Source of the DNA: Iphione sp. A-MEVVRFRX5
Lineage: Eukaryota
Length of the DNA: 64,000 nucleotides
Reading direction: 5' to 3'
NCBI GenBank assembly: GCA_976226885.1
Contig: OZ320318.1
Location: 60,884,001-60,948,000 of the forward strand
Under the pieces are notes generated by a model, which saw nothing but the letters and a program-made list of their open reading frames with translations, was not told the origin of the DNA and did not search any database. A program made the translations under genes and the position numbers. This document shows positions 6,939-61,050 of the stretch, in pieces. Position 1 is the stretch's first letter, and every line of letters begins with the position of its first letter.

Positions 6939-9900
6939 CTGGATAAAAGCAAGACATAATGTACATTTTATCTAACAATCTGAAACAAGTTGTATTGAGA
7001 GTGTCAGACTTCTATACTTTGTACGAGTACGGGTCAAGCAATTTTAAATGATTAATTCACTCAGGCAGAGTAACTGTTAACTTATAACAAACAACACCAA
7101 CATAAATATATGTTGCTGCATAGGGCACGAGACATTACAATGTAAAAATCAATGTGTAACCACATCATCAGAGCTCTTTAAATTTTTTGGGCCCACCTGA
7201 CGCAACATAATTACAAAGTAATGTTTAATGCTTTATGTAAACTTTTTGGTATATAGCAGATTTTGACTGGAGCAAAACCGATTATGATGTCATTTTCAGG
7301 GTCAAAGATTCTGCTGTGGTGGTGTAAATGGTAGTTTGGCAATGGATAAATCCAACATACTTTATCACATGTATTCTAAAAACTTAGTTTTTTGGTCATA
7401 AACATATAAATTGACTCACTCCTGATGAGCCACAGTTTCCTGATGAGGCTGAAGGAGACCATATCAAGTACAGCCATAATAATGACACCGGCTAGTGCTG
7501 CATTTGGGATGAACCTGAACAGCGGTGTCATGACACCCAGAGCAAGCAGGATGAGTGCACCAGTCCACAGTCCTCCAGCAGGTGTCCGCACACCACTTTG
7601 GGAGTTCACGGCTGTCCTATTGACATGTAGTGGAAAAATATGATGGAAATACAACAAAATCAATTTAAATCACTCTCAGAGAGTAAACTTTAAAAAAAGC
7701 CCTATAACAAACATGTTCAAGAAGAGGAACAGTGACACCTGAATCAAACATAAGGACTGTATCTCGGCCTGAGCCCTGAACACAAAACAAAGGCCTGCGT
7801 GACCAGTACCTTTATCTGCAGAGTGCGTATTTGTGAGAGTATGTAGTCATACATTTTAATTGGGAGTTCACAATGCTGCTTATTCTCATAAAGAAAGGTG
7901 AATCTCCAAATAAGCTGCTATACTAGACCCATAGACTAACTAACTGAAATTGCCATGCAATGACAAGAGTAATTTGAACTATGTTGCAATCGATGGCTGA
8001 AACCAGCATTATTGCTGACGCCCTGTTGCTCTTTTTTTAAATGAAAAAGAATCTTTACATGCTCAAAAATTATTGTGTGTTATGACTGCAGCGGCTCTAC
8101 ATATGCTAAACCTTTTTCATTTCGAAACCTACACAACCTCCCAACAAATGGTACCTATACTACTGTTACACATCCAAGCATAAACCTATATACCATCTTC
8201 TATAAAGTTGGTGGAATAGGCATGAAAATATTTAAATTAATAATAAGTTTACATGTCATCCCCTAAGGCTTAATTTATATCAACTCGTATGTCATGTCGT
8301 TGTATCTGTGTTGGCATTAAACATCCTTTTTTTCCTTAATTTGAACATGCCCAAATCAAAGAAACATATACTCCATGTTTTGAGAGTGAAACACGGATGG
8401 GAAACAGGGTCACATGAAAAGGGGGCAACGCTTGTAAAACGCCTCTGCAAGCATACATCTAGCAAAGGACACAACACGGCAAAATCCTCATGTCTTCAGA
8501 GCAGGTTTAATCTAGCCCCTCCATGTACACGGGCAGCAACACCTGACAACTGAAACAGACTTTCTTCTATGAAGTCATGATTTATATGCGGGCTTCTGAA
8601 AAGTAATACTTTTTTAGTCATGTTTAGTTTGTTATAAATGGCTTCCAACAACTTTTCAAACTTTCTGAAACACACTTCCTCTGTTCCTAGTGAGTTGTGT
8701 ACAGCCAATGTGAAAAGTAGTAATGCAGTTCAACAGAACTTCAGTTTTAAACGCAAAGTATTTACCTATATTATATTGACTATATTACTAATTATCGAAC
8801 CTTGGTAATCTCAGTAATAAAATCGTGCAACGATTTTTCAAAAGGAAGTTGTGAACTAATTTCACGTTTATCTTTCCATTTTTTTTATCTTCTGGCCTGA
8901 CTTTTGAAAAAAAATCATTACCGTGAAAAACTTCCTGTCACAGGGTATGAGGCAGCAAAAGATCCGACTAGATTCGATGCACCTGTAAAGCACAAAATAG
9001 GAAACTGTCTAACAATTCATAATACAGAGACAAGTAAATCACATGCGTGTACACAATAATTGCGAAAACTAGATGGATCTAGTCCAAATAATGAGAATAA
9101 CTGTTTGTCATGCACTTACAAGAAAGGAAGCTATCCTTCCTGAGGCACCTTTGTCACAGCACATAACAATTATATCCACAGTAAGACAGACAAAAGCACA
9201 CTCACCGATAGCAATCAGTTCTTGATTAGCATCTATTCTGTATTTATTTCTTCTTGCTGAAATACGAGATTGTTGTTGGGTGATTAGAAATACCGACAGA
9301 TCAATGAACAAAACTAGAGCAAATGCAAAGTCTTCTATAGTTTCCTACTAAAAAGTACACACCAACAATAGGCTACTGAGTAAGTAAATTGAATACGACA
9401 GAAATTTAAGCAAAACAATTCAGTTAATAACATGTACGTTCTTACCAAAGGCGTTTCCTATTGCAATTGATTCAACTACTCCCATTAGCGGGACAACTGC
9501 AAGCCCTCCGCCAATTTTCTGAAACCAGAAAAAAAACAATATCTGTGAATACATTTCCCCAAAATCCTCTCTGCTTCAACACGCATTATTTAATACATGT
9601 CCAGTCAGACCCTGTTATCTAGGTTCTAATCCAGAAAACTGATTCCAAAGTCACAGAAAGATTGAATTTAATGTAATGAGGTCTCTGCTTATATTAGATA
9701 TAATGCTATGTTTTGCTGAAAATGGGACGTCATAGTAAAGTTTCCACCGATCAAAGTGTTGTTTCCCGACGTCGGCAGCTGCTTCAGTTATTCAGATGCT
9801 TTTGCTGATGCTTTAAAACAGTACTGAGTTGTTTGTAAGGCCAGGCAAGAGACTAAGACTTGTGCCTAGTTTGACCGCCAGCTCTTGCCACATTTGATGC

Positions 9901-17200: not shown

Positions 17201-20200
17201 GCCAAGCAGGCAGTATACGAAGCAACCCATAAAGGCCGAATAAAGGCCGTACTGAAAGACATGAAGGGTCCAACAATCTAAGTCTTTTCTGTGTCACGAG
17301 GAGGAGGAAGGAGATAACTGGGTACGTAACATGTACAGTATAAGGAAGAACAACAGAAGTGTACGAACATGTTGTCAATGGAATAATTTATCCAAGAGGC
17401 AGTAACAGAAGGGTAAATTTGTCTTTGTCTCTGATTCTGGCTGTCTGTCTGTCTGTCTGTCTCTCTCTCTGTATCTGTATCTGTCCCTTACTTTGTCTGT
17501 CTGTCTCTCTCTCTTTCTGTCTCTCCCTCTTTCTGTCGGTCTGTCTNNNNNNNNNNNNNNNNNNNNNNNNNNNNNNNNNNNNNNNNNNNNNNNNNNNNNN
17601 NNNNNNNNNNNNNNNNNNNNNNNNNNNNNNNNNNNNNNNNNNNNNNNNNNNNNNNNNNNNNNNNNNNNNNNNNNNNNNNNNNNNNNNNNNNNNNNNNNNN
17701 NNNNNNNNNNNNNNNNNNNNNNNNNNNNNNNNATGATTAGGAAAGGAACCAACCTGGGGTGGTAATTCAGCGACCTGTGCATAAGCCAGACCTTGTGGAA
17801 TGACGGTGAGACCGACGGTGAGACCAGCAATAAGATCCCCTTGAAACTCAGGGCACCTGAAATAAAGTAAACCATCATGACCACCAGCACGAGCATTATC
17901 CACAGACGCTGTCCAGTACTAGACACAAATTTACTTAACTATCCGGTAATATGGTGTGAATAGAGTCCCTAAAAATAAGTTAAATTTAAACACGAATAAA
18001 AAAGGTCGATAGCCTTAAATGCCATAGATAGTCTCTGATGCTTGCCGGGCGTTGGAAGGTATTGCATCGCGCACTGCTCAGGAGTTACCTAAAGGGTCCT
18101 CATTATATTTACGGGCTCATGTGGGACTAGCACGCAGAGTGGGACAAGCCATATCTACTATGAAAGTATCGTTCTTCACTTCATGCTTCTTTTGTTTTGA
18201 AGCGAACACAGTGCCCACCTTTACAATTTGTCTGGGCAGCAAAGGCCGTTACGAATTCCTCATTATACCCAGCATCTGCCGATTTGGAAACCTGTTCCAG
18301 TGTATATTCAATAGACTCCCTCTGGGGCGACCACCAAGGGGACTGGATAAATATTGTCTAACTCGCGATCTTATCGCCCCCACTGACATATGACAATTTC
18401 ATATGAACGTCACCAGGAATGGTGATCTCACTTTTAACATTAACAAGTGCCTTTGTCACTTACCCCCTCTGACACCACAGGGGCGCAGACCTGTTTGTAA
18501 GCTACTCTTCCACAGACCAATGAGACTTGATGTAGTGACTGTACCTTCACCAATAATGGTTTGATTTTGATGAAACAAAATTAATTAGAAAGCGTACATA
18601 TATGCAACCATATGTATTGATATAGGGAAGAACGTGTGAAATTAATCAAAATATATTGTATCGTAATGTATAAGCAATTTGCTATAAAAAAGAAGGAAAT
18701 ATCAGATGATTAAAAACGTATTGCATCGTGTCGTACAACAACCATGTACTATGATAAATCGAAGTAGGTGAATATTAGAAGGATTGGAACGTGTGTAAAG
18801 ATACTGTCGCATCCCATCCCATCTCATCAAATGTAAATACAGTTAGACCCTGGTCATATATACAACTGCTGTATATTTTAAATCCCAGGTTAAATTAAAG
18901 TTTATAAAAAAAAAAGTGACTCAGGAGTATGCCGGTGTAGGTTTTATATGAGTTTATCTGAACAAAAATTAAAAAGATTACATGTAATCAAGAATAGGAA
19001 GCAATTTCTCTACACCAAACTGAAAGAGTGTCAGAGTTTTGTTCTGCTTTCTTTTATTCTGTTAACTACCTTAAAACATATGGTAGTATGAATTATTTCA
19101 AGAAAAGATTTAAATAACCTATGAAGAACAATGAATCGTGACGTTTAGAAAGAGTTTATACTAGTGAGTTCTTCACCCATGGCCTGATCTACTTTCAGGC
19201 AATGCTTTATTTATGTTGTGTAAACAGTACATTTACAATTGACTCATTGATTAAATCAGTTTCACCTTCTCAGCTAGACTGACTTCTTATTCCTTTGTAG
19301 TGGTGGCTGCCATCGTGTCTTGTGGAGTCTTTTTGTATAGAAACGTGGTCAGCAGCTCAGCAAGTAAATGAAGAAACTGCTCCCAATTCCTGTTTTTATC
19401 CCCTCCTGACGGGCAAGCATATAAGATCAAGCCAATGAGAGCACTCCTTCAGTGACATCTCATCCATGCTTTGAAGACAGTCCCAGCATGGAGAGGTGCG
19501 ACCTGATAACTTTGGGCTTCCCTCTTTCTTCACCTGTCTGAAGAGAGCCCCAGCCCCAGGTGGCGTGACCTGATGACTTTGGCCCTTCTCCTTTCTTCAC
19601 CATTTGAAGGGAGCCCCAGTCCTAGGAGGCATGACCTGATGACTTTGTGCCTCCCCTTTTGTTATTTATGTTAACCTGTTTGAAGAGTGTCCAGATCCAG
19701 GTGGTGTGAGCTGATGACTTTGGGTCTCCCCCTTTCTACCACTTGTTTGTAGAGAACCCAGCACTATGAGGCATGACCTAATGACTTTGGGCCTTCACCT
19801 TATTCACCTGTTTGAAGGGAACCCCAGCTCTAGGAGCCATGACCTGATGACTTTGAGCCTCCCCCTTTGTTCATCTATTTGAAGAGAGCCCCAGATCCAG
19901 GTGGTGTGACCTGATGACTTTTGGTTCCCCCCCCCTTCTTCACCTGTTTGATGAGAACCCAGCACTAGGAGGCATGACATGATGACTTTGGGCCTCCCCC
20001 TTTGTTCACCTGTTTGAAGGGACCCCCCACCCTAGGGGACATGACCTGATGACTGAGCCTCATCTGTTTGAGGAGAGCCCCATCCCTAGGAAGCCTGACC
20101 TGATGACTTCACAGCTGCCTTAGCACCTGCTGCTCCAGCCCCAGTATGGAGAGATGCAACCTCACAACTTCGCACCATCTTATGACTTGCTGCTCTAGCC

Positions 20201-23200
20201 CTATGCCTAGAGAGGCTATTCGGTTTTTGCTGCACTTTACTAAATGGTCTCAGGGTGTCCTGTTGGCTGTTTCTAGATCTGCCCCCCGATCTGGTCTCCC
20301 CCAGTCTGTTCTTATACAGGGAAATGTACAGGAGGCCATTCCATTCTAGGAGAATCTGGTCTCTGCCCCAGTCCTGTTTCCCCCGAGGTTTGGTCTTTAA
20401 CCTGAAGACTGCTGTATGTCCCATTGGTAGGGCAGATTCCACTTAGACGATGGTGGATAAGCATCTTGGATTTGCAGAGCTATAATTCACGTTAGTTAAG
20501 TCATCAGTCAGTTTCTGATATAAGTATGTACTGAGATATTCCATTTATTTAGTCCATGTTGTAGTATAGGAGATTCTGCTGAGAGCCCCCCCTTGAATGT
20601 TATGTTGAGTGTGAGATAATGCATCGATGCACAGACATAAAAATGATGGCAGGATAAATCATCTCAATAGCAGGACAAATCCACTAATAGGTTCTCTCCA
20701 AGGTTAAATCGGCTGCATGCAAGCGCTGAAGGCATTTGCTTTGGTGTTAAAAATGCATGCAGTCCTTCCCCATTTCCAGGCAAGAAAGACATAACCCTTG
20801 ATGTGTGCCCTTCATTCAGATTACAGTGTATACCTGTATCTTCTTTTTCTTGCAGGTCTGCCATGAACAGATTGAACAAATCTATCTGGCCGCAGCCTCT
20901 CCAGACATTTGCAGGTATTACTTGTATGTGCAAACCAAAAGTTGTCTATGGCTAGTGCCTTTCTTAGTAGATAGCAGAAACCACTGTCAGTTGGACTGTT
21001 TGTTTGACTTTATGACTATGCTGGCTGTTGCCTATAGTTTACCCATCGATTGGATAAAGTGATGAACATTCCATATTTATTTAGCTTTTCCTTTATTATT
21101 TTAAGTGATTCTCAATGCATTTAAGAAATTTCTCATACAATGCTTCTGGACGAAGTCAAATAAATTATAGGAATTACAGGACCACCACTCAACCTACTCA
21201 CAAACTATCTGATGAACAGAACACAAACCACCACAGTCAATGGTAAGACATTACAAATCATACATCATATCTGGAGTACCCCCAAGGCTCTGTTCTGGAG
21301 CCAATAATGTTTACACTGTACATAGGTCACCTTTGAACAGAAAGTAAATTTATGGTGAACATCATTACAGTATGTGTGCACATGATGCAGTCGTACTCTT
21401 TACCCTCAAAGACTTAAGTAAACGTATGTATAGACAATGCACAATCCACTCTCACTAAAATCTATAACTGGTTAACATTTGATTAATTGGCACTGAATAT
21501 TAGTAAAATCAAATATGTGGTCTTTAGGTCTTCAAGAAAGAACATACACTGCGCTAATCAAGACAGTTAATCATCAACTCTCATCACTGGATTTGATCAT
21601 TATATACCTAGACACCAGAACAAATCAAGGTCATACCAAGCCAACCCATAGGGTGCCAACGCGCATCTGAGTTGTACTTCCTGTTGTTGAGGGCCTGGGC
21701 ACAGGCAGTAAGTAAAAAACAAAAATATTGTTTTATAAACAGAAAATGACTTGAGTATCAGCTTTTCCCATAGTACTGACGGGAGACATGTATCCAGCTC
21801 TTTGAACTTCCCACTTCTCATACCAGAAACATGACTTACATGTAGTGGATGATGAAGCTGTGAGCTGCAATTTAGAGATCAGGCACCCTCAACCCCTATA
21901 CAATTGAGACGCATTAACCCAAGTACCTCCTTTACTTGAATTTTTGTATGGATTCAAGATATTCCGGTTACTGAAATTGCCACCTATGCGTCTCCTGGCA
22001 GGGAAAACTTGCATAATCCTTAATGTCTATAGAAAAGAAAGTATGTTGCTTCAACCTATGGCTTGTGCTGTTTCTCCCTTTAGGAGGTCATAGCCCCCAT
22101 CTCGTACGTGTATATGTTAGTTTTACCCATGATAAACATTCTAGCTTGTGTTTGTTCTACATTTACAAGGTCGCCGTCCATTTTTCACTTTTATGTAACA
22201 GTTGCTTTGTGTTGACTATAGACATCCTAATGCCAGGCATTTCCTTTGTTCTCCCTTGGCCAGTTAACTGCAATTATTTTCTATATAAACAAGAGTGTGG
22301 ACCTGTGAGGTCTATTGTCCCCCGCCATCAACTGCCTTGAGAGAGAGGGAGAGAGAAGGAGGGAGAGGGAGGGAGAGAGAGGGAGAGAGAGAGAGACAAT
22401 GTGTGTGTGTGTCTGTGTGTGTGTGTGGTGTCTCTCTCTCTTTACAACCACCTTGATTTGCAACTTGTTTTGGGGTTGGTTGGCTAGACTTGTCTAAATC
22501 CTTCAGGTTTACAACTCTCGGTTCTGCATGACTGAGCACAACACCCTTGGTTCTGCCTCACTGAGCACCAGACCTTTACAAACCTTTGGTTCTGCATGAG
22601 TGAGCACAGCACTCCTGGTTCTGCCTCACTGAGCACCAGACTGCTACATGCTGATAGTGGTAGAGGGGAGATATTGGTGAGTGTGTATGTGTATGGTCAG
22701 ACCTAGGAACCCCTGAACCAGGTATGTATGTTTGTAGGTGTGTTAGCACAAGAGTAAAATTGGTATAATTTCACCTTCAAAATACTTGGATTACTACCAG
22801 AATTACCCAGTGCCATGGTGCCATATATACCACTATCATATATTAAAATCAGTTCGTTTGATTGAAGGGTTTGAGACTTATAAGACCCACAAGAGTGTGA
22901 TGGATGGTCAGGACACCAGCCCATAGCATTCCTAATGTCCCCCCCCCCCCTCTATGAGGCGGGGGACAATTAAGTAAAAAATGGCTTGAAATGTACTCCA
23001 GTTGCAGATGATGAAATCCAGATACACAGTATAATTTATAGTGAAAATTGTTTCATCACTGACATTGAGTCTGGTTGATGTGATTCTCTGGTTGCGGGGT
23101 CTCCAGATGCCGAGGTCTGATTGTACATACATGCACACAGGCACACACACATTCACAGGCGTCCTCTGCTCACCCAGCTCATCCTGACCAAATTTCACAT

Positions 23201-26200
23201 AACAGCAATGGCACCACTTCTTGAATGAGCCCCGGTTTCCTTACGTGCGTGGCCATGCGTGCGTTGGAGTGCGGGAAATGCACCAATTTTACTGTCATGG
23301 TTATTTTAATGAGAGGTGTTCCTTACGTGCGTTGCTGTGCGTGTGCGTTGCTGTGCGTCGCCATGCGTGGCTGGTTTTCGGACCGTTCCCGTAAATTTCA
23401 CGCACACGCACAGCAATGCACTGGTATTTCCATCATTTTGACTGACTTTGACTGAATTTGACTGTCTTTTGACTGATGATACCGCACATTTCCACACAAT
23501 GACGTTTTTTTCCCGAATTTTTCCGCACATTTTTGCCGTTTTTTGGCCGAATTTGCATGAAATATGCGTTTTTCGGGACAATTTTCATGAAATTTGCCGT
23601 TCTTTGGACAAATTTGCATGAAATATGCGTTTTTCGGGACAATTTGCATGGAATTTGCCGTTTTTCGGCAGTTTTTTGCTGTTTTTTCATATTCTCTAGT
23701 CATATACGCACACAAACGCACGCATCAGTTGAGGACACCCCTGTGCGTTGCCGTACGGAAACCGGCCTAGACACCCCGTCCATGCGTTTTCCGCACTGAC
23801 ACGCACACGCATACCAACGGACGGCACCGCAGGTAAGGAAACCGGGCCTGAGGCAGTATCTGTGCGTGTGTGTGTGCGCGTGTGCATGCATGTGTGTGTG
23901 ATGAGAGTTTGTGTCAGAGGGAGGGTAGTAATCAAGGCCACCAACTAAAACAGGTGGCCAGCACAAAAACAACATTCCTCCCTTAGTCACGAACCTGCCC
24001 AAATTCACGACTGGCTTAGACTTCAAACAGCTTGGCACGTGAGCGGCACACGTTTTACATAGTGGAGGTCTCCCACCACCAACTGAAACATTATGAGTTG
24101 ATCTGACCTCCAGTGATTAATAGGTGGGATAAGCCGCATTACTTTTCCACTAAACTAGTCCTGTAAAATACATGTATATTGGACCTTTTCCTACTGGAAT
24201 CTGGAAGCAAATCAAGTGAAAAATGTTCAGCCTTCCTGCTAATCTAGCGGCTGGGGTACTCCTCAGGTAATCAAGGTATGTCTGATATCGGTCCTTTTTC
24301 ATAGGCCATTATCCGCGCATTTCCCTTAGTATAAGGAAATGAGCATCGAGGTTAGTGTCCACTTTGGAAACTACTACATTTGCTTTGATTCAAGATCATG
24401 ATATGGTCCGATACCTTCAAGGAGTCGCCTAAGGTCAGTTTATTGACGATTTCCCTCCCATTTACCCATATCGCTTTGGGCTGCTTGTTTTTACCTGCTG
24501 GAACAATGATTTCAAGCTCTTAGCAAAGTAATGATTATGAAGCTTTATTTTTTTTATACATCGCCTTCTAACAGGTCTAAAAGCTGGGCAAAGGTGGTGG
24601 AGAGGTCTCTGGATATGCTGCCCCCACTGCTACCAGCCACATCTCAAGCATCGACAGCTTCTTCGGTCTGCATACCCTACCTGGGATAGGGTAAACCCTC
24701 TCAAGCTGTTTTCCTGTCGCAAATGAGTAAAAGGCTGAGCAAGAATGATGCCAGGGTGTCAACAGTGACAATTTAGTGTGTCAGACTAATCTCCGCAAAC
24801 CACACCAAGAGAGTCAACCCTCGAAAGGTTGTTATTATCTTAGCCTTACTCGGCATGTAACTTTTCTAAAACTACCACATAGATTAGTCAGAAAGGAAAG
24901 TCCATAAAATTCATACCTCACCTGAAATATTAATATCAGATCCTCCAAACATAGGTAATGTTAAATATCAGTAAAAACTGTCATGACATTGTTTTGGATC
25001 TCACAAGGTGGAGATACCTTGGGTAATGGGAAAACATAATAAAATGTTACTTTTAAGAGTCCGTAAATTGAGGACGAAGGGTTTAGGCCTAGGCTCTAAC
25101 TTTTTGTGCGATAATCCAAGCCCGGCACCCGAGGCCGCAGGCCGAGGGTGCAAGGGCTTGGATTATCGCACAAAAAGTATAGAGCCTAGGCTTAAACACT
25201 GTTCTGACTACGACAATTTTATAAAAGAGGGTGAAATATTACCAAATTACTGCTTATCTTGGTAGAATTTTGTTGAGATGATGAGGCTTGTACGCCATTT
25301 TGGATTTGGATGTTTACTTTTGCATCGTGACTTTCTATTGGTCGTTTACCTTTTTATGGAAATATATTAAAATAAATGTGAAATTTGACAAATACAAGTC
25401 AAGAAACATTTAATAATTCAATTATTCAACAATTTATTCACATAAGGTGTACATTTATTAAGAATTTTCCAAAACGAGTATGTGCGAGCTGCATCTAATG
25501 CGCGTTTCCGGTTTACATGTTCATTTGCGCGCGAATTGAATATTAAAGACGCAGTTAGCGAAATTTGCTCCTGAGAACATACCAGCAACATCTTGTTCGA
25601 TATTTTTGTCAACTGTTGTGGAAGATGCTGTAGTTACTGATACAATGGACTTTGATGACGGAATTGTGGCTTTCTGCTCATCCGCATTGACAATTGCGGG
25701 CACAACACTTTCGGGATTGACTAAACATGAATCTGCCTTGCTTGCTTTATCTGCAACAACGGTTGCAGTCTTTCCGAAACTAGACAGGGTTTTGGACATA
25801 GATGCCTTCACATCTGAGGAACAACTTCCCAAATATGGAGCAAGTGAGTTAACATTTTTATGACCCGTTACTTCTTGTATTTTGGTCGGGGCAAAGCCAG
25901 CTCGGTCAAGGTTGGTTACTACCGTTGAGCGAATACAATGATTTGTGTATTTTTGTGAGAGACCACCATCTATACTCATATCCGACATCATACTGTATAA
26001 CTTGTTGCGACCCACAACCATATTGTCATACCAGCATGTCTGCTCATAACGATAAGGCCGTTTTGGCCGCTGAAAAAAATATGGATTCATTTCATTCAAT
26101 TTAGCCATGTATTTTTTGAAGCAAACCAAAGGGCACCTCCTAGGGTTCTCAGGTGTTGCATACATTCGTGTACTAACATCTTTCTCGTCTCGATTTAAAC

Positions 26201-29200
26201 CTTGACGGGTCTTTTCTTTCTCATTGAATGTCATATGAACATATTCCCTGTCCCTTCCATCAGTTGCTATGTTGAAGCTGTCCTTCCTTAATTCCCTCAA
26301 CCCTTCCCTTCCCCGTCTCCCAAAGTGAACCATTACATTATAAAACACCTGTCTCTGCAGCCCTACTGGATCATCCTTGAACACCTTGGAATAGAGCTTG
26401 TCAATGTCCTCATCTTCTATCACAGACTTATGCTGAGTGTGATCATTGCCCGTTTTGCGAATTTTGGCTACATACCCTTTAAAGGCTAAATTGGCATTCT
26501 TGAAAATGGGGTCGCTCGTAATATTAAATGGTTTGGAAAATGGTGGGTCATTTAGATACCGCTGTAGACCAAAACGCAAATTTTTCACAGCACTCTTTGA
26601 ATACATTTCACCTTTCTTATTATTAACCACTGTATAATATTGTTCGAGGGTATCCGCCAACTGCTGCTGGGAGTAATCTTCAAATGCCGGGTCTTTGCCT
26701 ACTCCAATGAGCCACTCTGAAAAATCATGAAAGTGCTACTAAATAATTGTTTTACAGTGATTTAATTTCATTTCATCCCATCTCCCCCATGTCAGCTTTA
26801 TAATTTACTATGCGTTTCATACCTTTGAACTGCTTGACCGCCCAACGTGTCTGTTGTTTTGTTGCTTCTGCTGTCCTGTGTTCCTTCAATTCGTCCATTT
26901 CCTCCTTGCTTGGCACATGGAAGCGAACGTTTGGATGATTCAAGGGAGACTTCTGCTGCTCATCTATCAATGTTTCTTGAACTGCAATGAAATAATCCAC
27001 ACATACCTACACTATTTGCATTAATGTTCTATGCGCCTCCCCCACCCTACGGAAACTTACATGAAAATCATAGGTAATATGATTGAAATTAATTGGAAAC
27101 TGCATAGACATATACTCACTTTCTCCTTCTGAGAGGGAATCTTGGAATTCTGCTGCATCGAGATCCATTTCGAAGGCCTCCAAGAATTTCGATATTTGGT
27201 ATATTCCTGCGATGTACTCTTCTTTGGTTGCGGTGTTTTCGAGACGATATGCATCTAGTTCCACGTTGGGGTAACGGAATATTTCCTTAACTTTGCATAG
27301 TTTCTCTTGGAAAATCACAAAATCTCCCTCTTTAATCTTAGTTTCAGCCATTTCAGCCGTTTCATTCATTCGACGTTCTCTTGTCAAAAAGATCGTCTGC
27401 TCGACCTGTGTTTATAAAACGTAGGGTTCATTTCCGCTGTTTCGACCAATGAAATCAACTTCCCTTATAGTATTTCCTGTCACATGACTTTTCTTCTATT
27501 TGTTGACAAGAAGGCATTCTTCGACGGTGTTTGTTACATTTCTTAGGAAAATAACCACAATGTCCATTAATTATTTCAGTATAACGCTGTCAAATTTCCT
27601 AACAATAATTCAGGGTCACAAAACTTGTGAGATACATACAAAAGGCGTCAGATTTTCATGAAGCGAGTCGTCAAGGGTCCGCCATTTTATTTTACTTGAA
27701 ACCAATGGTATTGCTGCTTACAAATCGCTTCCCGGGAATGGTCCAGAATTCAAATCCAGCTGAGAACAATCGTTTCTAGGGGACAATGTACCGATTATCA
27801 CAACAGGAGTGTTAGAACGGAGGACAACTCGACACCATCAATACAATTTCGCCATGGACACACACAAACATTAATTAATCATTCCATCAAGCACCACCAC
27901 AATATCACCACATCTGCAATAACCCAGCACTCAGTAAGGAAGTTAACAGTTTCACCACTGATGCGACAGTAGATGTTTCTGCTCTTGCTTTTTGCCAGTT
28001 CGTTTCAAAGCAGGTCCCTGCTGATAAAAATAAATGGAACTGACCTGTACTTTGGAAGCCATTGTAGTATTGGTAGCTTCTTTTTAACATTAGCTAACGT
28101 ACATGTGTTGCGCATGCAGGCACGGCAGTTGAAACTCATGATGCGTTCTTTGACGTCATGGCATGCAGAGGTAACGTCTTTACAGCCCTGTTGTAAGCCT
28201 GGAGTGAAAAAAGAAATAATTAATTGTCTTCACATAAAAAAGAGATCAAAATACATTTAATCGGGGTGTCTAATGGGACTACTTCATTCCCTGGTGGAAC
28301 ATTATCCTCATACTAATGCTAAACTTCAACTTTCTTGTAAATTAAAAACGAATACTTAAAAACAATTTGTGCAGCAGCAAGCAATTTCTGACACTGGAAA
28401 AGTATAACAGTCGACACCCGCGTCGGCGACCACTTCGGGACTGTGTGAAAGCGGTCGCCCCAACAAGTGGTTGCCCCAGTTGTTCACCTCTCTTCTCCCT
28501 CTCACCAAAGTAACTTAGACAATCGTCATATGTGTTAAGAGTCCTAAAAATGCTGAATTTGACGGGTAAGAGTCAAAAGGTGCTGAATTCGACACGTTAA
28601 AGTCCCAAATGTGCTGAATTTGACAAGTAAGACTCCTTCTTACCCTTCTTACTGACAGATTACATGATACATCAAACGGTCAACATGGAAGTAAAATTTA
28701 TAGCTACATTTTTAGAAGCCCTCTTCTACTGCTTTAAAATATAACACGTGCAACATTTATAGCTACATATACATTAAGCCTTCTCATGTGCTACTATCCT
28801 TTGCAATTTACGAACGTGGACAAGCTTAAAACAATTCCTATGAAATTGAAAAGACTTTTATATTCTAGTATGAACAGTTGGTGAACAGTTTGTAAACCGT
28901 TCCTTAATGTACCAACATGCTCCTAAACGTGCAAATACATCTGTATGCGCTATGTACCGTGGCATGAACTCGTAAGTTCATTGTTGATATAAAGTTAATC
29001 AGTCATAATTCGCCTGGGTCATAAAACAACAAATGTTGTAAACATATAATGTCACTGTGTGTGATAATAATTCAGATGAATATTGACAAGAAGCAAACAA
29101 CTCCAACGAGACAAAAACGTCATTCATGGCTAGTTACATAAATACGATGTACACGTTTTTGGGGTGTGTTTACCCACCCTCAGCAGTTGAGCATGTCACG

Positions 29201-37109: not shown

Positions 37110-38070
37110 GACAGAGACCTGTCTGTTACCTGTTGTGTGTCCCCTCTAATCTTCTGTAGCGGTGTCTGTTGGATGTTGTGTGTCCCCTGTAATGCTCTGT
37201 AGAGGTGTCTGTTACCTATTGTGTGTCCCCTGTAATGCTCTGTAGAGGTGTCTGTTACCTATTGTGTGTCCCCTGTAATGCTCTGTAGAGGTGTCTGTGA
37301 CCTGTTTTGTGGCCCCTGTAATGCTCTGTAGAGGTGTCTGTTGAATGTTTTGTGTCCCCTCTAATCTTCTGTAGTGGTGTCTGTTGGATGTTGTTTGTCC
37401 CCTGTAATGCTCTGTAGAGTTGTCTGTGACCTGTTGTGTGTTTCCTGTAATGCTCTGTAGAGGTGTCTGTTGGATGTTGTTTGTCCCCTGTAATGCTCTG
37501 TAGAGTTGTCTGTGACCTGTTGTGTGTTTCCTGTAATGCTCTGTAGAGGTGTCTGTTGGATGTTGTGCATCCCCTGTAATGCTCTGTAGAGGTGTCTGTT
37601 GGCTGTTGTGTGTTCTCTGTAATGCTTTGTAGAGGTGTCTGTGACCTGTTATGTGTCTCCTGTAATGCTCTGGAGAGATGTCTGGTACCGGTTGTGTGTC
37701 CCCTGTAATGCTCTGTAGAGGTGTCTGTTGAATGTTTTGTGTCCCCTGTAACATTCTGTAGTGGTGTCTGTTGGATGTTGTGTGTCCCCTGTAATGCTCT
37801 GTAGAGCTGTTTGTGACTTGTTGTGTGTTTCCTGTAATGCTCTGTAGTGGTGTCTGTTGGATGTTGTGTATCCCCTGTAATGCTCTGTAGAGGCATCTGT
37901 TGGATGTTGTATGTCCCCTGTAACTCTCTAAAGAGGCACATGTTACCTGCTGTGTGTCCCCTGTAATGCTCTGTAGAGGTGTCTGTTACCTGTTGTGAGT
38001 CCCCTGCAATGCTCTGTAGAGGTGTCTGTGACCTGTTGTGTGTTTCCTGTAATGCTCTGTATAGGTGTCT
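37110..38070. repeat. 43-bp minisatellite, about 22 copies
   Basis: Unit cccctgtaatgctctgtagaggtgtctgttggatgttgtgtgt (starts at 37141, 37184...). It produces the repetitive minus-strand ORFs with a 43-aa period. Confidence 0.95.
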
Positions 38071-38116
38071 GGGCATCAAGGGAAGGGGGCTTGGCGTCAG
38101 GGGAGGGGGCCTTGCT

Positions 38117-38260
38117 TTAAGTGAGATACATAAGCTCGTGTGTGGCTGTTTGCGAAATAAACCCATGGGTCATTCGCCCACTCGGCTGCGCCTCGTGGGC
38201 TACTGACCCGTGGGTTTATTTCGCATACAGCCACACACTCGTTATGTATCTATCACTTAA
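38117..38260. mobile_element. 144-bp TTAA-bounded palindromic (foldback) element
   Basis: Arms ttaagtga..gatacataa..gtgtgtggctgt.tgcgaaataaaccca.gggtca and their reverse complement. The core on the minus strand reads gcccac-gaggcgcagccga-gtgggc. Confidence 0.8.
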
Positions 38261-40595: not shown

Positions 40596-43500
40596 GTAAG
40601 TAAAGTTAATCTTGTGAAAACATCTAAAAACGATTTTAGAAGTTTGTCTCCCCCTGTCAACTGGGAGTGCTGAGTTGTCAGTCTCATATCATGTTTACAC
40701 TCCCTATATAAATCTGTCTGTTTAAAACAGTGCGAGCACTGAAGGTGCTTGTTGTTTTCTGAAAGCGGGTATGGTCGATATGGGCCATGGTCAATATGAT
40801 CCAGAGGATATGATCCAACACTCTAGTTGATATGAGCCAAGCCATATGAGCAAGACCCCTCTCCAGTGAGCAGCCCTGGCACTGTCTTCAAGTTCCCACC
40901 ATCAAGCTTTTTACACTGTCTTTCTGACTTCTCTATAATCACATGGATAAAGCACTGTCAGATACTCACAGTGCAATAATAGTAACTCTTAAGTTTGATG
41001 GGCAGGTCATCACCCCAGAAAAAAAACCCAGAGATAATAACAGTGTAACTGAAGAAGAAAACACCATAGGTCTTGGTATAAGTGTATCAGAACGAAATGG
41101 GACAACATGCTAAATGATGTATACACAAATGCATTCAATGATGACCGAATGACACAATTGCATAATAATCTTGACAAACTTGGTACCGGTACAACTGGTA
41201 TTACACAGGAAGCAATTGATAGTATTATTGAGGATGTTTGCCTAATGTTCATTGAACCTGATAAAGAACTTGGTATGTGCAAGGAAGTACCTAGCAAAAA
41301 GAAAGTGTATACGAGAAACAGGTCAACAAAGGATCAACACAACAAACCCTGGTTCTCAAAATTATGTCTTAAGAAACGAGTTGAATACTTCGGAATCAAG
41401 AATAAATTTAGAAATATAAAAACAGAAGCAGCCAAATCCAAAGTTAAAGAAAAGTCAATTGAGTACAAAAAGGCCATCAGAAGAGAATATAAGAGCTATC
41501 ACAAGGCACTCCATAAGAAACTACAGGGCCTCAAATCCAGTAACCCAAGATCGAAGTATTGGAATATCTTGAATAAAGCTACCAACCATACTGAAACAGG
41601 GAGACATATATCCACACAGGTACTCATGGAACACTTTAAAAAACTAAATCAAAAACCACATACAGCAAATGAAAGCACTCCTAAAGCAAACACAAGTGTG
41701 GAAACTAATCAAACAGACAACCCTATAAATATCCCATTTACAATGACAGAAGTACAGTTCTAAATTGATCAAGAAACTGAAGAACAACAAAGCATGTGGC
41801 TCTGATCACATAATTAATGAATACCTAAAAAACTGTAACGAGAAGGTAGTGTCAGTTATTGTGAAACTGTTCAATACCATTCTGTCATTAGGAGTTGTCC
41901 CCACCAATTGGTGTATAGGCATCATCAAACCATTGTACAAGAAAAAGGGATCAATTAGTGACCCAGACAATTACTGGGGAATTACCCTTCTCAGTTGCTT
42001 AGGCAAACTATTCACAGCATGCCTAAACACTCGTTTGACCAGCTATCTTGAGGAGAACCATATATTAGGAGAGGAACAAGCTGGGTTTAGGGCAAACTAC
42101 AGCACACTAGATCACATCTTTGTCCTTCACTCACTTATAGAAATTTACTTGCACTGCAAAAAACGAATTTACTGTGCCTTTATAGACTATACAAAGGCAT
42201 TTCATCTAATCAACAGGGCATCTCTATAGACAAAGGTGATCTCTTGCGGCATACATGGAAACATCTTTAATGTCATAAAAAATATGTATGACAAAGCAAA
42301 ATCCTGTGTCAAAAATGGTAACATGGTATCAGGCATATTTGACTGCAATATTGGTGTCCGACAAGGAGAAAATCTCTCTTCTCTTCTTTTTGCCATTTAT
42401 CTAAATGACTTTAAAGATACTATCAGTGACAGCTACAAGGGACTAGAAGTTAACTTTGATAACATACACCTATTCTTAAGAATGTATGTTCTCCTCTATG
42501 CAGATGACACCATAATCATGGCAGATTCTGCCATGAAACTGCAGAGTGCCCTGAAGGCTGTAGAGGAATATTGTACCCAATGGAACCTCACTGTAAATAC
42601 TTCCAAAACTAAGATTGTAGTTTTCTGTAGGGGTAAGGTCAGGAGACATCCAGACTTTATATTTAGTAACAAAGTCCTAGAAGTGGTTGAGGAATACCTA
42701 TACTTAGGAATAACCTTTAATTATAATAGCCGATTCAACAAAGCTATAAACAAATAGGTAACACAGGCAAGGCGAGCTATGTTCAATCTCACTACTAAGG
42801 CAAGAAAGGTATGTCTCCCAATAGACATCTAAACAGAGCTTTTTGATCAACTGGTAACACCTATTCTGCTGTATGAATGCAAAATCTGGGGCTTCCAAAA
42901 CACGGATCAAATTGAGATGTTCCACAAAAAGTTTTGAAGAATTTACTAAAAATTCATAGGGGATCATCAAACTGTATGGTATATGGAGAACTTGGACGCT
43001 TCAGCCTTACTAGTCAGATTGATAAGAGAATGGTTAATTTCTGGGCCAGGATACACACAGGCAAAGAAACCAAGGCCTCATACATTCTATACCAAATGTT
43101 ATACCAACTATATGATAAAGGAGAATTCAAATCAAAGTAGATTTCTAAAATCAAATGCACACTAGACAGGTGTGGTCTATCTGCAGTCTGGTCTCAGGAA
43201 TGCAAATTTAACCCAGACTGGCTAAAACATTCCATAGACCTAAGAATCAGTGACATAGATAGCCCAAACTGGAAGAGTGAAACCCATAGAAATAAGCTAT
43301 GTACTAATTACAGAATTTTTAAGCAAAAAGTTGGCTTTGAAAACTACCTCCTTGACTTAGATGTATGTAACAGAGTTACTTTAAGCAAATTCCGTTGCTG
43401 CAACCATAACCTGCCTGTAACAAACAGTAGATTTAGTATTGAACATGCGAATCAAATCTGTAATCTCTGCACACTAAACAAGCAGGGAGACAAATTTCAC

Positions 43501-58739: not shown

Positions 58740-61050
58740 CCCTTTCCTGCTTCCCAGTCTGCCCATCCTCGGTAAATATTAAGAGAGATTCTCCAAACAG
58801 CAAAATAAAACTGCTAGCGAAAGATCAAACTACTGACCATCGATACAAAAGAGAAACTCTTGCAGAAAGAGCTGCCACCATACACATTTATCTGAACAGA
58901 ATTGGACAGTGGTTGGCTACTGCCTGTACTGCAGTATGGTTCATACCAACAAATCCCACCTTTACCAAGGAAATCCACAGATATCCAAAGCAGAAAGAGC
59001 CTTCACGCTTCAAAGCTTATATGGCATCAAAGGTGTTTCCTCTGTAGCACCATTTGATGCCCTGAAGATTATCCCAAATGGGTTCACGTCTTGTTAACCT
59101 CTCCATCAATACCAAAAAGTGAGTGAGATTCTGCCCCAGTGCCAATACATAAAGATTATAGTGAAGTAGAGGTAGGAAACTACCTGTCTATTTTATTACT
59201 GCTTTTCCAGGGCAAGATGCTACAAAGGCTCGTCTAAGACAAACTTAACAAGTACTAAGAGACTAGCAACCTGTTCACAGCAAATCAAGGTGGATTCATT
59301 GGGAGACCTTCCAAAATAAGCACCTCAAAAACGTTCATCAACAGGATATGCAACAGTTTAAGGGCTTCATCAGGTAAAAGTCTTTGCCAGTTGTGTGCAC
59401 AGCATACGCTAACCCTTCTCTTTGGAGCTCAGACCAAATCAATTACAGAACAGGTATACAGAACCATGGTAAAGCAGCTTCGGAATGGTAAACCTAGTGC
59501 TTTTCTAGGATTAAAGATGGAAGTAAGTAAGGATATACTGGTGATCCTTCATAAACAGATAGTATACCTGCTGAATTACTCGTTTATGTATAAGGTAATT
59601 CCAGTTGAATGGAAAACAGCTTTGGTAACACTGATTTTCAAAGGAGGCGACAAGAGTCAAGTGACAAATTACAGACCTGTGAGTGCACTACCTGTATTTG
59701 CTAAACTACTAGAACAGGCAGTGTTTAAACAAATGATGGCATATATGGATAAATATAACTTGTTAGCAAAGGAACAGCATGGGTTCAGACCAAACAGAAG
59801 CATGGGTACAGCCATTGGGATACTGATGAACAAAATTTATTAGGGTCTGAATAATAACGAATTAGTGGGTAGTGTATATATTAATTGTAAAAAAGCTTTT
59901 GACTCTGTGAACCATGAGATAGTTTTATATAAATTGAAGCAAATAGGAATGGGCCTTGAATTAGATTGGTTTGTGAATTATCTAAAAGGACTCAAACAGA
60001 GGGTTAAAGTAAAGGGGATAATATCGTCTGAAAGGGAAATCCAGTGTGGAGTTCCACAAGGATCAACCCTAGGCCCCCTACTATTTGCCATCTTCAGTAA
60101 TGACCTTCCACAGTGCTGCATCAAATAAAAAGAACTATTGTATGCTGAAAATACGGTACTGTACATGACAGGCAGAAATTTAGCTGAATTGCAACAAAAT
60201 ATGCAGAGTGAATTGGAGGTAGTGTCAAATTGATACAAGAACAAGAGAAATTTAGTGAATGCAAAGAAGACTGAGTTAGTGCTATATGGGTCTGGTAAAA
60301 CTGACAAAGTCTTGATGCTACAAATGGATAATGTAACGCCTATATGGCATCAAAGATGTTTCCAATGTAGCACCATTTAATGCCCTGAAGATTATCCCAA
60401 ATGGGTTCATGTCTTGTTAATGTCTCCATCAATACCAAAAAGTGAGTGAGATTCTGCCACAGTGCCCATACATAAAGATTATAGTGAAGTAGAGGTAGGA
60501 AACTACCTGTCTATTTTATTACCGCTTTTCCAGGGCAAGATGGTACAAAGGCTTGTCTAAGACAAACTTAACAAGTACATATACTAAGAAACCAGCAACC
60601 TAGTCACAGCAAATCAAGGTGGATTCATGACTTTAAATGGTTGGTCAAGCAGTTTTTTATAAATAGGACTAGGAAGGAGAACTACAAAGTGTCATGAATG
60701 TATATAACTCGAATAGTGTGAGAGATCTTGAGTGAATGTGAGTAAAACGGAACTAACTGTATAATTGATTGAATGTGAGTGAGAGTTGATGCGTACATAT
60801 TCTTGCTGAGGATTGATCTATATTGGAGGGTGATATTGATATTATTATTATTAGTGTACAGGAAAACTGTATGGAGATTAAGTAATCAGATATTGTATGT
60901 TTCTCGATGTATACCAGTGATATTAAGATGTGTTGATCATTATCATGTATTCATCCATTTTCATTATTGTACTTTGATGCAGTCACCTGAACCTACATAC
61001 TGAATGTATTTTCACCCCAGGAATAAAAAAAATGTTTAAAAAAAAGAAAT
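58740..61050 (+). mobile_element. Mosaic of CR1/L2-type LINE RT fragments with a polyA-like end
   Basis: WKTALVTLIFKGGDKSQVTNYRPVSALPVFAKLLE, QHGFRPNRS, INCKKAFDSVNH, CGVPQGSTLGPLLFAIFSNDLP. A-rich end at about 61020-61050. A ~285-bp RT segment is repeated at 59018-59299 and 60341-60628. Confidence 0.85.

What the first reader, a model, noticed from the sequence alone, without database searches (positions are those of the whole stretch)
25521..27369. Intact three-exon Crypton-type tyrosine recombinase nested in an SLC26A11 intron
Seen: three ORF-track fragments (27007-27387, 26773-27000, 25521-26660) join through two canonical phase-1 introns (27119-26982; 26822-26717) into one 534-aa frame. 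It keeps the full R-K-HxxR-H-Y catalytic set (GRRGRE, EKEKT, NHCIRST, TGHKN, SLAPY), an upstream TATAAA and CCAAT, and two AATAAA signals. The other recognisable transposon ORFs in the window are broken; this one is not. Established: Cryptons are intron-bearing, RT-less DNA transposons with tyrosine recombinases, and domesticated animal derivatives include the DUF3504 genes KCTD1/15, ZMYM2/3/4, QRICH1 and KIAA1958. Inference: this is either a recent, potentially active animal Crypton or a catalytically competent domesticated gene.
Basis: partly seen in the sequence, partly recalled or inferred. Interest (0 to 1): 0.88.

Follow-up and report, generated by a model that had tools for sequence, protein, structure and literature searches.

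The report
Intact Crypton transposon with terminal palindrome
This is a structurally complete copy of a Crypton, a known kind of jumping gene moved by a tyrosine recombinase, sitting inside an intron of an invertebrate anion-transporter gene; comparison with relatives shows the lineage also carries a conserved DNA palindrome at its 3' end that may be its recombination site.

Summary
Three minus-strand exons (27369-27120, 26981-26823, 26716-25521) join through two GT..AG phase-1 introns into a 534-aa frame. Pfam finds DUF3504 above its cutoff. The AlphaFold model matches Cre over about 320 aligned columns. R271, K305, H396, R399, H422 and Y431 are conserved. Relatives support both introns: intron 2 lies at the same codon in 15 of 15 cases, and intronless relatives read straight through the intron 1 join.

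The gene lies in an intron of an SLC26-type gene, on the same strand. It is a CryptonA-type DNA transposon, a known kind. At least 6,445 representative proteins are related; the closest is 45-49% identical.

New here:
- A 117-bp palindrome (25081-25197) lies 636 bp past the tyrosine codon. Relatives from other (meta)genomes carry an equivalent (13 in 46 kb of such zones against 5 in 166 kb elsewhere).
- In one multi-copy family, similarity between copies ends 8-12 bp after the palindrome.
- Many palindrome centres share a CTCG...CTCG asymmetry and a GNA mini-hairpin tip.
- The lineage also has an N-terminal SH3-like barrel (exon 1) and a conserved C-terminal peptide.

Copy number in this genome, the 5' end and current activity could not be tested. 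Other first-stage notes report Cryptons with hairpins elsewhere in this genome.

The parts
27446..27450 (-). Inverted CCAAT box (ATTGG on the gene strand), candidate promoter element
   Evidence: Relatives also carry ATTGG/CCAAT boxes upstream of their N-terminal ORF. Function is inferred.
27411..27416 (-). TATAAA, 42 nt upstream of the ATG
   Evidence: Function is inferred.
27120..27369 (-). Exon 1: aa 1-83 plus the first base of codon 84. It encodes a small SH3-like beta-barrel (strands within residues 17-63) followed by an acidic linker.
   Evidence: a homologous N-terminal domain in 10 relatives' loci. AlphaFold model m67049bab69a7 has pLDDT 83-93 over residues 11-60. The best structural matches are eIF5A/EF-P domain I and the eS4 KOW barrel, but they are weak (E 6e-3).
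26982..27119 (-). Intron 1 (138 nt, phase 1, GTGAGT..CAG)
   Evidence: Relatives L001, L038 and L037 encode the exon 1 and exon 2 equivalents in one uninterrupted ORF and align across the join. The exact splice sites lie in a poorly conserved linker and rest on the splice consensus only.
26823..26981 (-). Exon 2: linker plus the conserved motif RF..s.ee.d.l......TKQQTRWAVKQFK, the start of the N-terminal (core-binding) recombinase domain
   Evidence: Matches 25 relatives' loci and annotated proteins P0027 (Ptychodera) and P0083 (Mytilus) across the exon 2/3 join.
26717..26822 (-). Intron 2 (106 nt, phase 1, GTATGA..CAG)
   Evidence: The same position and phase, with GT..AG, occurs in 15 of 15 cases from 12 distinct related loci: F[KR] G|GT...AG|AN TGG.
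25521..26716 (-). Exon 3: the last two bases of codon 137, then aa 138-534 and the stop. It holds the Cre-like two-domain tyrosine recombinase (R271, K305, H396, R399, H422, Y431; Tyr codon 25833-25835), a disordered Ser/Thr-rich linker and the conserved C-terminal peptide MFSGANFANCVFNIQF (516-531).
   Evidence: Pfam DUF3504 54 bits and Phage_integrase 26.6 bits. Alignment A1 shows the invariant residues and the C-terminal motif. The model has pLDDT 82.8. Foldseek finds Cre/Tre at E 3e-8, plus QRICH1, XerA, Tn1549 Int and XerH. The PDB profile search finds QRICH1, Tn1549 Int and XerA.
25433..25459 (-). Two AATAAA poly(A) signals (25454-25459 and 25433-25438)
   Evidence: Function is inferred.
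25201..25207 (-). TCAGAAC motif 3 nt before the palindrome
   Evidence: The same heptamer lies directly before the palindrome in the closest relatives L002 and L024 (TAGAAC in L003).
25081..25197 (-). 117-bp imperfect palindrome, the probable 3'-terminal structure of the element. On the gene strand its centre reads CCTCGGCC-TGC-GGCCTCGG. On the other strand it carries a C-GCA-G triloop.
   Evidence: Its DNA fold is -58 kcal/mol, z = -12.8. It is one of only two long palindromes in the 64-kb window. It starts 636 bp after the Tyr codon; relatives lie at 430-705 bp or 1380-1860 bp. For the core motifs.
28046..28139 (-). Context: upstream exon of the host SLC26-type gene (N-terminal LPILQWLPKY motif), with its donor AG|GTCAGT at 28045
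   Evidence: All five PDB matches are SLC26 proteins, aligned at their N-terminal motif: pendrin, SLC26A11 (9iar), SLC26A9 and a sulfate transporter. Sequence. The upper exon bound is approximate.
17742..17903 (-). Context: next recognisable host exon, the start of the Sulfate_transp domain
   Evidence: Pfam PF00916, positions 1-33, 39.8 bits. A further exon at 7376-7663 matches positions 302-371.

Best explanation
This is a structurally complete copy of a CryptonA-lineage DNA transposon. Its likely span is from somewhere between 27450 and 27800 down to about 25075 on the minus strand. It is inserted in the sense orientation in the intron that follows the first recognisable coding exon of an SLC26A11-like gene.

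What is shown:
- The element carries one spliced gene for a 534-aa protein. The protein has an N-terminal SH3-like barrel, a Cre-like two-domain tyrosine recombinase with the full R-K-H-R-H-Y set, a disordered linker and a conserved C-terminal hydrophobic peptide.
- A 117-bp palindrome follows the gene. Its equivalent marks the 3' end of mobile copies in relatives.

What is inferred, from the Goodwin model of Crypton movement and from Cre-type chemistry:
- The recombinase assembles on the element's ends, cuts through a 3'-phosphotyrosine on Y431, releases the element as a circle and re-inserts it at short matching target sequences.
- The palindrome next to the circle junction acts as the recombinase-binding or architectural site, possibly in folded (cruciform or hairpin) form.
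- The N-terminal barrel may tether the protein to nucleic acid or chromatin.
- The C-terminal peptide may dock in trans between subunits, as the C-termini of Cre and lambda Int do.

Whether this particular copy is active now is unknown.
For: Gene model and frame.

Family and fold: DUF3504 at 54 bits against a cutoff of 29.7, and Phage_integrase at 26.6 bits. The model has pLDDT 82.8 and matches Cre/Tre over about 320 columns at E 3e-8, as well as QRICH1, XerA and Tn1549 Int.

Catalytic residues: invariant or nearly invariant in 28 aligned relatives.

Introns: both are supported by comparison with relatives.

Mobility of relatives:
- Clusters at 90% identity hold 25-60 member sequences.
- One contig carries a head-to-tail array of 3.2-kb units that are 97.6-99.9% identical, with one palindrome per unit.
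- Deletion derivatives with the same breakpoints occur on several contigs.

Palindrome association:
- 8 of 10 non-redundant loci with at least 2 kb of sequence downstream of the Tyr codon carry a palindrome within that 2 kb.
- 13 palindromes lie in 45.9 kb of such zones, against 5 in 166 kb elsewhere (Poisson P about 3e-9).
- In one family, six copies with different flanks lose similarity 8-12 bp after the palindrome.
- 8 of 63 stem pairs in that family show compensatory changes.
- Two direct CTCG copies occur in 9 of 28 distinct centres, against a shuffle mean of 0.56.
- A GCGN(N)AGC mini-hairpin motif occurs in 12 of 27 centres, against a shuffle mean of 1.1.
- TCAGAAC is shared with the closest relatives.

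Host context.

Literature: Cryptons are intron-bearing elements that encode only a tyrosine recombinase, and they are known in six animal phyla (PMC3212892). Active Crypton insertion and excision has been seen in Chlamydomonas (PMC9977147).
Against: - Only one copy is visible in the window, and this genome could not be searched. Multi-copy status here rests on unchecked first-stage notes.
- The 5' end is not defined, and no terminal direct repeats could be identified from a single copy.
- No expression data are available.
- The closest relatives are only 44-49% identical, so age and selection (dN/dS) cannot be estimated.
- The role of the palindrome is inferred. Compensatory changes in DNA palindromes can also arise by arm-to-arm conversion.
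- Some relatives with 1-2 kb of downstream sequence show no palindrome.
- In L001 the palindrome lies upstream of the gene.
Confidence: 0.8

Rival explanations
1. A domesticated, Crypton-derived host gene that still has its catalytic residues. It would be fixed at this position and serve a cellular role rather than move.
For: The ORF is intact across three exons, with plausible promoter and poly(A) signals. There is only one copy in the window. Crypton domestication has happened repeatedly in animals (PMC3212892).
Against: - Known domesticated DUF3504 genes have lost catalytic residues and are fused to host domains (PMC3212892, PMC13465315). This gene keeps all six residues and has no host domain.
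- It keeps the non-coding palindrome, with the lineage-typical spacing, core and flanking motif. A host gene would have no need for that.
- It sits inside another gene's intron.
- No protein closer than 50% identity exists among 1.84 billion cluster representatives. This genome may simply be absent from that library, however.
Confidence: 0.08
2. A dead but young copy. It would be a genuine Crypton insertion whose gene is still intact but which can no longer move, for example because its 5' site is lost or the host silences it.
For: The 5' end cannot be recognised. The palindrome has mismatches and 4 gap positions (87% identity).
Against: Palindromes of clearly multi-copy relatives are equally imperfect, at 78-94%. 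The ORF has no defect and aligns without gaps to L001 over 316 aa. This rival differs from the best explanation only in current activity, which no tool here can test.
Confidence: 0.1
3. The recombinase belongs to a different tyrosine-recombinase element (a DIRS/Ngaro-type retrotransposon remnant or a larger cargo element), and the palindrome is an unrelated foldback or MITE insertion.
For: A second palindrome with a similar core lies at 38124-38251 with no recombinase gene nearby. Foldback repeats are common in invertebrate genomes.
Against: - No reverse-transcriptase or other long ORF lies within 22-31 kb.
- DIRS and Ngaro recombinases do not match DUF3504 (PMC3212892), whereas this one does.
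- Introns are retained.
- The gene-palindrome linkage recurs in many unrelated contigs at a similar distance.
Confidence: 0.02

Closest known systems
CryptonA elements of animals (Kojima & Jurka 2011, PMC3212892), e.g. those of sea urchin, acorn worm, sea anemone and medaka
   Same: It has a single intron-bearing gene for a tyrosine recombinase that matches DUF3504. It has no reverse transcriptase and no terminal inverted or long direct repeats. Its hosts are marine invertebrates. Non-autonomous derivatives and multi-copy families occur among relatives.
   Different: That paper states that animal Cryptons have no C-terminal domain and no terminal repeats. It contains no occurrence of 'palindrom' or 'hairpin'. 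This lineage has a short conserved C-terminal peptide, an N-terminal SH3-like barrel and a 100-180-bp subterminal 3' palindrome. I could not compare against Repbase sequences.
Glomhoppers: DUF3504-encoding CryptonA elements of Glomeromycota (PMC13465315)
   Same: The DUF3504 domain has intact catalytic residues. Copies with and without introns coexist. Mobility is inferred rather than shown.
   Different: The hosts are fungi. No palindrome or hairpin is mentioned in that paper. Sequence relatedness to this copy was not measured.
CryptonF-1_cRei of Chlamydomonas, the first Crypton seen to move (PMC9977147)
   Same: It is a transposon that encodes only a tyrosine recombinase. [quoted passage not shown] Both excision and copy gain were observed.
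   Different: It belongs to the CryptonF group in a green alga. The terminal motif and target of the present element are unknown.
Domesticated DUF3504 genes (KCTD1, ZMYM2/3/4, QRICH1, KIAA1958)
   Same: The fold and Pfam family are the same. QRICH1 (9hjt) is the best PDB sequence match and a top structural match.
   Different: Those genes lack the full catalytic set and are fused to host domains (PMC3212892). This gene keeps R-K-H-R-H-Y and stands alone, with a cis palindrome.
Cre/loxP and Xer-type tyrosine recombinases
   Same: It shares the two-domain C-clamp fold over about 320 aligned columns (TM 0.5-0.6) and the same catalytic residues.
   Different: Sequence identity is only 12-15%. The extra N-terminal barrel and the long tail are absent from Cre. 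No loxP-like 13-8-13 site has been identified here.
Folded-DNA recombination sites of tyrosine recombinases: integron attC (IntI) and the CTX-phage attP hairpin (XerCD). Also the subterminal 3' hairpin of Helitrons. All from my own knowledge.
   Same: Each is an imperfect palindrome of roughly 60-140 bp whose sequence varies while its structure is kept, with small conserved asymmetries near the tip. In Helitrons the hairpin also lies about 10 nt from an element end.
   Different: This is an analogy only. There is no evidence here that the Crypton palindrome is used in folded or single-stranded form. Helitrons use a HUH enzyme, not a tyrosine recombinase.

Membership tests
Crypton (tyrosine-recombinase DNA transposon) | Encodes a tyrosine recombinase with the catalytic R-H-R-Y tetrad (plus K and H/W) | tested here: met
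   R271, K305, H396, R399, H422 and Y431 are present. The aligned columns are invariant or conserved in 28 relatives. The fold is Cre-like.
Crypton (tyrosine-recombinase DNA transposon) | No reverse transcriptase or other transposition enzyme in the element | tested here: met
   No other ORF of at least 90 aa lies between 24.1 and 27.9 kb, and there is no RT ORF within 22-31 kb. Relatives' 3.2-kb array units hold only the recombinase gene.
Crypton (tyrosine-recombinase DNA transposon) | Introns retained in the gene (DNA-level transposition) | tested here: met
   There are two GT..AG introns. The position of intron 2 is conserved in 15 of 15 relatives' cases.
Crypton (tyrosine-recombinase DNA transposon) | No long terminal direct or inverted repeats; short (4-6 bp) direct repeats at the termini | tested here: inconclusive
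   No long repeats flank the gene. Short terminal repeats cannot be told from chance with one copy and an undefined 5' end.
Crypton (tyrosine-recombinase DNA transposon) | Repeated, dispersed copies in the host genome and insertion polymorphism | not testable with these tools
   This genome cannot be searched. There is only one copy in the window. Unchecked first-stage notes list 24 Crypton mentions elsewhere in the genome.
CryptonA group / Pfam DUF3504 | The recombinase domain matches DUF3504 (PF12012) above the gathering score | tested here: met
   54 bits against a cutoff of 29.7. Most of the 115 homologues carry PF12012 and/or PF00589. No phylogeny against named CryptonA and CryptonI references was made.
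Domesticated Crypton-derived gene | Loss of catalytic residues and/or fusion to host domains | tested here: not met
   The full catalytic set is kept. Apart from weak sub-threshold hits, no other Pfam domain was found in any exon.
Domesticated Crypton-derived gene | Single-copy syntenic orthologues under purifying selection | not testable with these tools
   No genome of a related species is available. The nearest proteins are 44-49% identical.
DIRS/Ngaro tyrosine-recombinase retrotransposons | Reverse transcriptase/RNase H gene and split or inverted terminal repeats | tested here: not met
   There is no RT nearby. Introns are retained. The match to DUF3504 is something DIRS and Ngaro recombinases lack, according to PMC3212892.

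The most novel reading that the evidence does not exclude
Animal CryptonA-type elements of this lineage may have a defined cis-acting end. This would be a 100-180-bp subterminal 3' palindrome whose arms vary freely. Its tip keeps a GNA-type mini-hairpin motif and a CTCG...CTCG asymmetry, in a mostly fixed orientation relative to the gene. The recombinase would recognise it, possibly in folded (cruciform or hairpin) form as in integron attC or CTX-phage attP. This would be the first candidate recombination or recognition site for animal Cryptons, which have been described as lacking terminal structures. The copy in this window would be a complete, testable example.
Probability: 0.4. Interest if true: 0.65.

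Novelty: new member of a known kind. Interest (0 to 1): 0.42.

Why it matters
In itself this is an ordinary, well-preserved Crypton copy. It adds a clean three-exon gene model, validated by comparison with relatives, for a lineage with no relative closer than about 49% identity.

The wider value lies in the cis structure. How Cryptons move is still largely a model, and published accounts say animal Cryptons have no terminal structures. A palindrome linked to the gene in many independent (meta)genomes gives a concrete, mutable target for binding, excision and integration assays. It ends the element in one family and carries a conserved asymmetric, hairpin-prone core.

The sense-oriented insertion 0.7 kb downstream of a host splice donor, with its own poly(A) signals, could also affect SLC26A11-like transcripts.

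Tried and rejected
- **Terminal repeats.** I looked for direct or inverted repeats bracketing the gene. Only short matches at chance level turned up: a 10-nt exact match at 25053/28535, when dozens of such matches are expected in 9 kb.
- **Second copy.** Self-BLAST and tblastn of the window for a second copy or fragment found none.
- **Earlier findings by sequence.** This look-up returned nothing.
- **Loci without DNA.** P0004 and P0022 gave no DNA because the sample files are too large.
- **Aligning the two window palindromes.** Aligning them with each other, and with those of L002, L003 and L024, shows that the arms do not align; only the core and the TCAGAAC motif are shared.
- **5' end in the multi-copy family.** Boundaries differ between copy pairs, so I gave no end.
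- **First palindrome scanner.** My first gapless scanner missed the window's own palindrome because of an indel. I replaced it with a self-reverse-complement BLAST.
- **Literature.** Searches for Crypton with palindrome, hairpin, stem-loop or cruciform found no paper that links them. The library lacks most subscription journals and Repbase Reports, so this is not proof of novelty.
- **Host organism.** It was not identified. The protein search tool cannot find full-length proteins from short exons.
- **dN/dS.** It was not attempted, because the nearest relatives are too diverged.

Full report
**1. Observation**

On the minus strand, three open segments join through two canonical introns. Exon 1 is 27369-27120, intron 1 is 27119-26982 (GTGAGT...TTGCAG), exon 2 is 26981-26823, intron 2 is 26822-26717 (GTATGA...TTTCAG), and exon 3 is 26716-25521. 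Both introns are phase 1. The CDS is 1605 nt and encodes 534 aa. All five quoted motifs are present. TATAAA lies at 27411-27416. An inverted CCAAT box (ATTGG on the gene strand) lies at 27446-27450. AATAAA lies at 25454-25459 and 25433-25438. The window has 40.4% G+C, so a 397-codon exon free of stops is not a chance ORF.

**2. The protein**

Exon 3 scores 54 bits on Pfam DUF3504 (cutoff 29.7) and 26.6 bits on Phage_integrase, just under that model's cutoff. A database search gave 115 relatives. The best are only 44-49% identical. The named ones come from an acorn worm, a mussel and a brittle star. An exhaustive search of 1.84 billion cluster representatives found 6,445 relatives at E up to 1e-3 and 485 at E up to 1e-30, none above 45% identity. 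The family is therefore large and this copy is a distinct branch of it.

In an alignment of 28 sequences, several columns are invariant or nearly so. They correspond to R271, K305, H396, H422 and Y431. R399 is conserved in most sequences.

An AlphaFold model built on that alignment has pLDDT 82.8. Only the Ser/Thr-rich tail, residues 321-375 of exon 3, is disordered. Foldseek matches the model to Cre and Tre over about 320 columns (E 3e-8, TM 0.5-0.6). QRICH1, XerA, Tn1549 integrase and XerH follow. A profile search of PDB sequences agrees.

After the variable tail, the last 16-19 residues (MFSGANFANCVFNIQF) form a motif shared by most full-length relatives.

**3. The gene model is supported by comparison**

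Annotated proteins and ORFs of relatives align across the exon 2/3 join. In 15 of 15 cases, from 12 distinct loci, relatives have a GT..AG phase-1 intron at exactly the same codon: F[KR] G|GT...AG|AN TGG.

Exon 1 is not an artefact. In L001, L038 and L037, the equivalents of exons 1 and 2 form one uninterrupted ORF that aligns across the join. Ten relatives' loci carry a homologous domain of about 50 residues. A model of exon 1 gives a five-stranded barrel with pLDDT 83-93. Its best structural matches are eIF5A/EF-P domain I and the eS4 KOW barrel, that is, an SH3-like fold. These matches are weak, at E 6e-3.

The exact splice sites of intron 1 lie in a poorly conserved acidic linker. They rest on the splice consensus only.

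**4. Host context**

Minus-strand exons at 17742-17903 and 7376-7663 match Sulfate_transp profile positions 1-33 and 302-371. A small exon that ends at 28046, with donor AG|GTCAGT, carries LPILQWLPKY. Its only PDB matches are five SLC26 proteins, all aligned at their N-terminal motif. One of them is SLC26A11.

The recombinase gene starts 677 bp downstream of that donor, on the same strand. It therefore lies within the roughly 10-kb intron that separates the two exons.

**5. The palindrome**

The window holds only two long palindromes. One lies at 25081-25197, 320 bp past the stop codon and 636 bp past the Tyr codon. The other lies at 38124-38251. Both fold far better than shuffled sequence, with z of -12.8 and -13.6.

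I fetched 74 loci that encode relatives. I scanned them with a self-reverse-complement BLAST and located the Tyr codon in each.
- Among non-redundant loci with at least 2 kb of sequence downstream of the Tyr codon, 8 of 10 have a palindrome within 2 kb. Among those with at least 1.5 kb downstream, 11 of 14 do.
- 13 palindromes fall in 45.9 kb of such zones, against 5 in 166 kb elsewhere (Poisson P about 3e-9).
- Distances from the Tyr codon cluster at 430-705 bp, where the window belongs with 636 bp, and at 1380-1860 bp.

One contig (L004/L005) is a head-to-tail array of 3.2-kb units that are 97.6-99.9% identical. Each unit has one gene and one palindrome, 612 bp past the Tyr codon.

In a multi-copy family from other metagenomes, six copies with different flanks are alignable through the palindrome. 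They diverge 8-12 bp after it, following GTCCTATT. There the palindrome is the subterminal 3' structure of the element. Eight of 63 stem pairs in that family show compensatory changes.

Between families the arms do not align, but the centres share three features:
- Two direct CTCG copies placed symmetrically break the palindrome. This occurs in 9 of 28 distinct centres, plus one in inverted orientation. Shuffles give a mean of 0.56 and a maximum of 4.
- A GCGN(N)AGC motif, or at least C-GNA-G, sits at the tip. The strict form occurs in 12 of 27 centres, against a shuffle mean of 1.1. This is the sequence class of the extraordinarily stable DNA mini-hairpins (PMC13037366).
- The motif lies mostly on the strand opposite the gene: 13 against 3 for the relaxed form.

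The window's palindrome has the CCTCGG...CCTCGG asymmetry and a C-GCA-G tip. It shares TCAGAAC immediately upstream with its closest relatives L002 and L024.

By analogy with the multi-copy family, the 3' end of the window's element lies at about 25075-25081. The 5' end is not defined. In the array, and in L001, the palindrome precedes the next start codon by about 330-420 bp. That would put the window's 5' end no further upstream than about 27800, clear of the host splice donor.

**6. Interpretation**

Shown:
- an intact, spliced gene for a tyrosine recombinase of the DUF3504/CryptonA kind;
- a lineage-typical non-coding palindrome;
- a position within a host intron.

Inferred:
- The recombinase excises the element as a circle and re-inserts it at short matching targets. 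This is the Goodwin model, summarised in PMC3212892. Insertions and clean excisions were observed for a CryptonF element in Chlamydomonas, which also gained copies (PMC9977147).
- The palindrome next to the junction is the recombinase's recognition or architectural site. The hairpin-prone tip and the conserved asymmetry suggest use in folded form, by analogy with integron attC and the CTX-phage attP (my own knowledge). That part is a hypothesis.

Domestication is unlikely but not excluded. The gene keeps all catalytic residues, has no host fusion and retains the cis palindrome. Copy number and synteny could not be tested.

**7. Comparison with the literature**

Kojima and Jurka describe animal Cryptons as having no C-terminal domain and no terminal repeats. 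Their text never mentions palindromes or hairpins. The same is true of the 2026 Glomhopper paper. Full-text searches found no paper that links Cryptons to such structures. The library is incomplete and I could not consult Repbase, so I file the element as a new member of a known kind. The palindrome is a lineage feature that deserves checking.

**8. Earlier notes of this scan**

Other first-stage notes, all unchecked, list Cryptons elsewhere in this genome. They include a head-to-tail array and several 'terminal hairpin' remarks. One of them mentions GCGAAGC. That note led me to test the mini-hairpin motif. These notes are leads, not support.

Noticed in passing
window 38124-38251: A second long palindrome (z = -13.6) with no recombinase gene nearby. 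Its centre reads CACTCGGC-TGC-GCCTCGTG, which has the same CTCG...CTCG asymmetry, and it carries a strict GCGCAGC mini-hairpin motif on the minus strand. It abuts a tandem-repeat ORF region at 37212-38166. It may be the 3' end of a non-autonomous or decayed Crypton.
   Followed up: partly
L004 and L005 (ENA ERZ25069853, contig ctg20619c, 17.9 kb): The whole contig is a head-to-tail array of about 5.5 Crypton units of 3.2 kb, 97.6-99.9% identical. Each unit has an N-terminal ORF, a conserved intron, a recombinase ORF and one 170-bp palindrome.
   Followed up: partly
L063, L065, L066, L073 compared with L049: Several contigs share the same internal deletion of about 680 bp inside the recombinase ORF. 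They are 85-90% identical to each other. This looks like an amplified non-autonomous derivative family.
   Followed up: partly
L001 2497-6070: In this relative the conserved intron is 3.5 kb long and holds three tandem repeats of about 791 bp. The C-terminal motif is in another frame (7613-7789). The palindrome lies upstream of the gene (1685-1830) rather than downstream.
   Followed up: partly
L002, L008, L014, L033, L036, L058, L071, L072: Many metagenome contigs end within a few bases of the palindrome. Either assemblies break at the palindrome, or it marks a repeat boundary.
   Followed up: no
window 41107-42757, 59391-59843 and 1617-1931: Reverse-transcriptase-like ORFs, split over several frames. 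They look like decayed LINE-type elements.
   Followed up: no
window 23125-23900: A cluster of inverted repeats (arms up to 44 nt, 430-700 nt apart) and 61-nt tandem repeats (23532-23653). It may be a foldback-type repeat about 1.2 kb beyond the Crypton's palindrome.
   Followed up: no
window 28540-28635: Three tandem copies of a unit of about 31 nt, 0.4 kb upstream of the SLC26-type exon. A weak (63%) look-alike lies at 25366-25400 inside the Crypton's 3' region, which is probably chance.
   Followed up: no
window 25433-25459 relative to the host gene: The Crypton is in the same orientation as the host gene and brings two AATAAA signals into the intron. It could truncate or alter host transcripts.
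   Followed up: no
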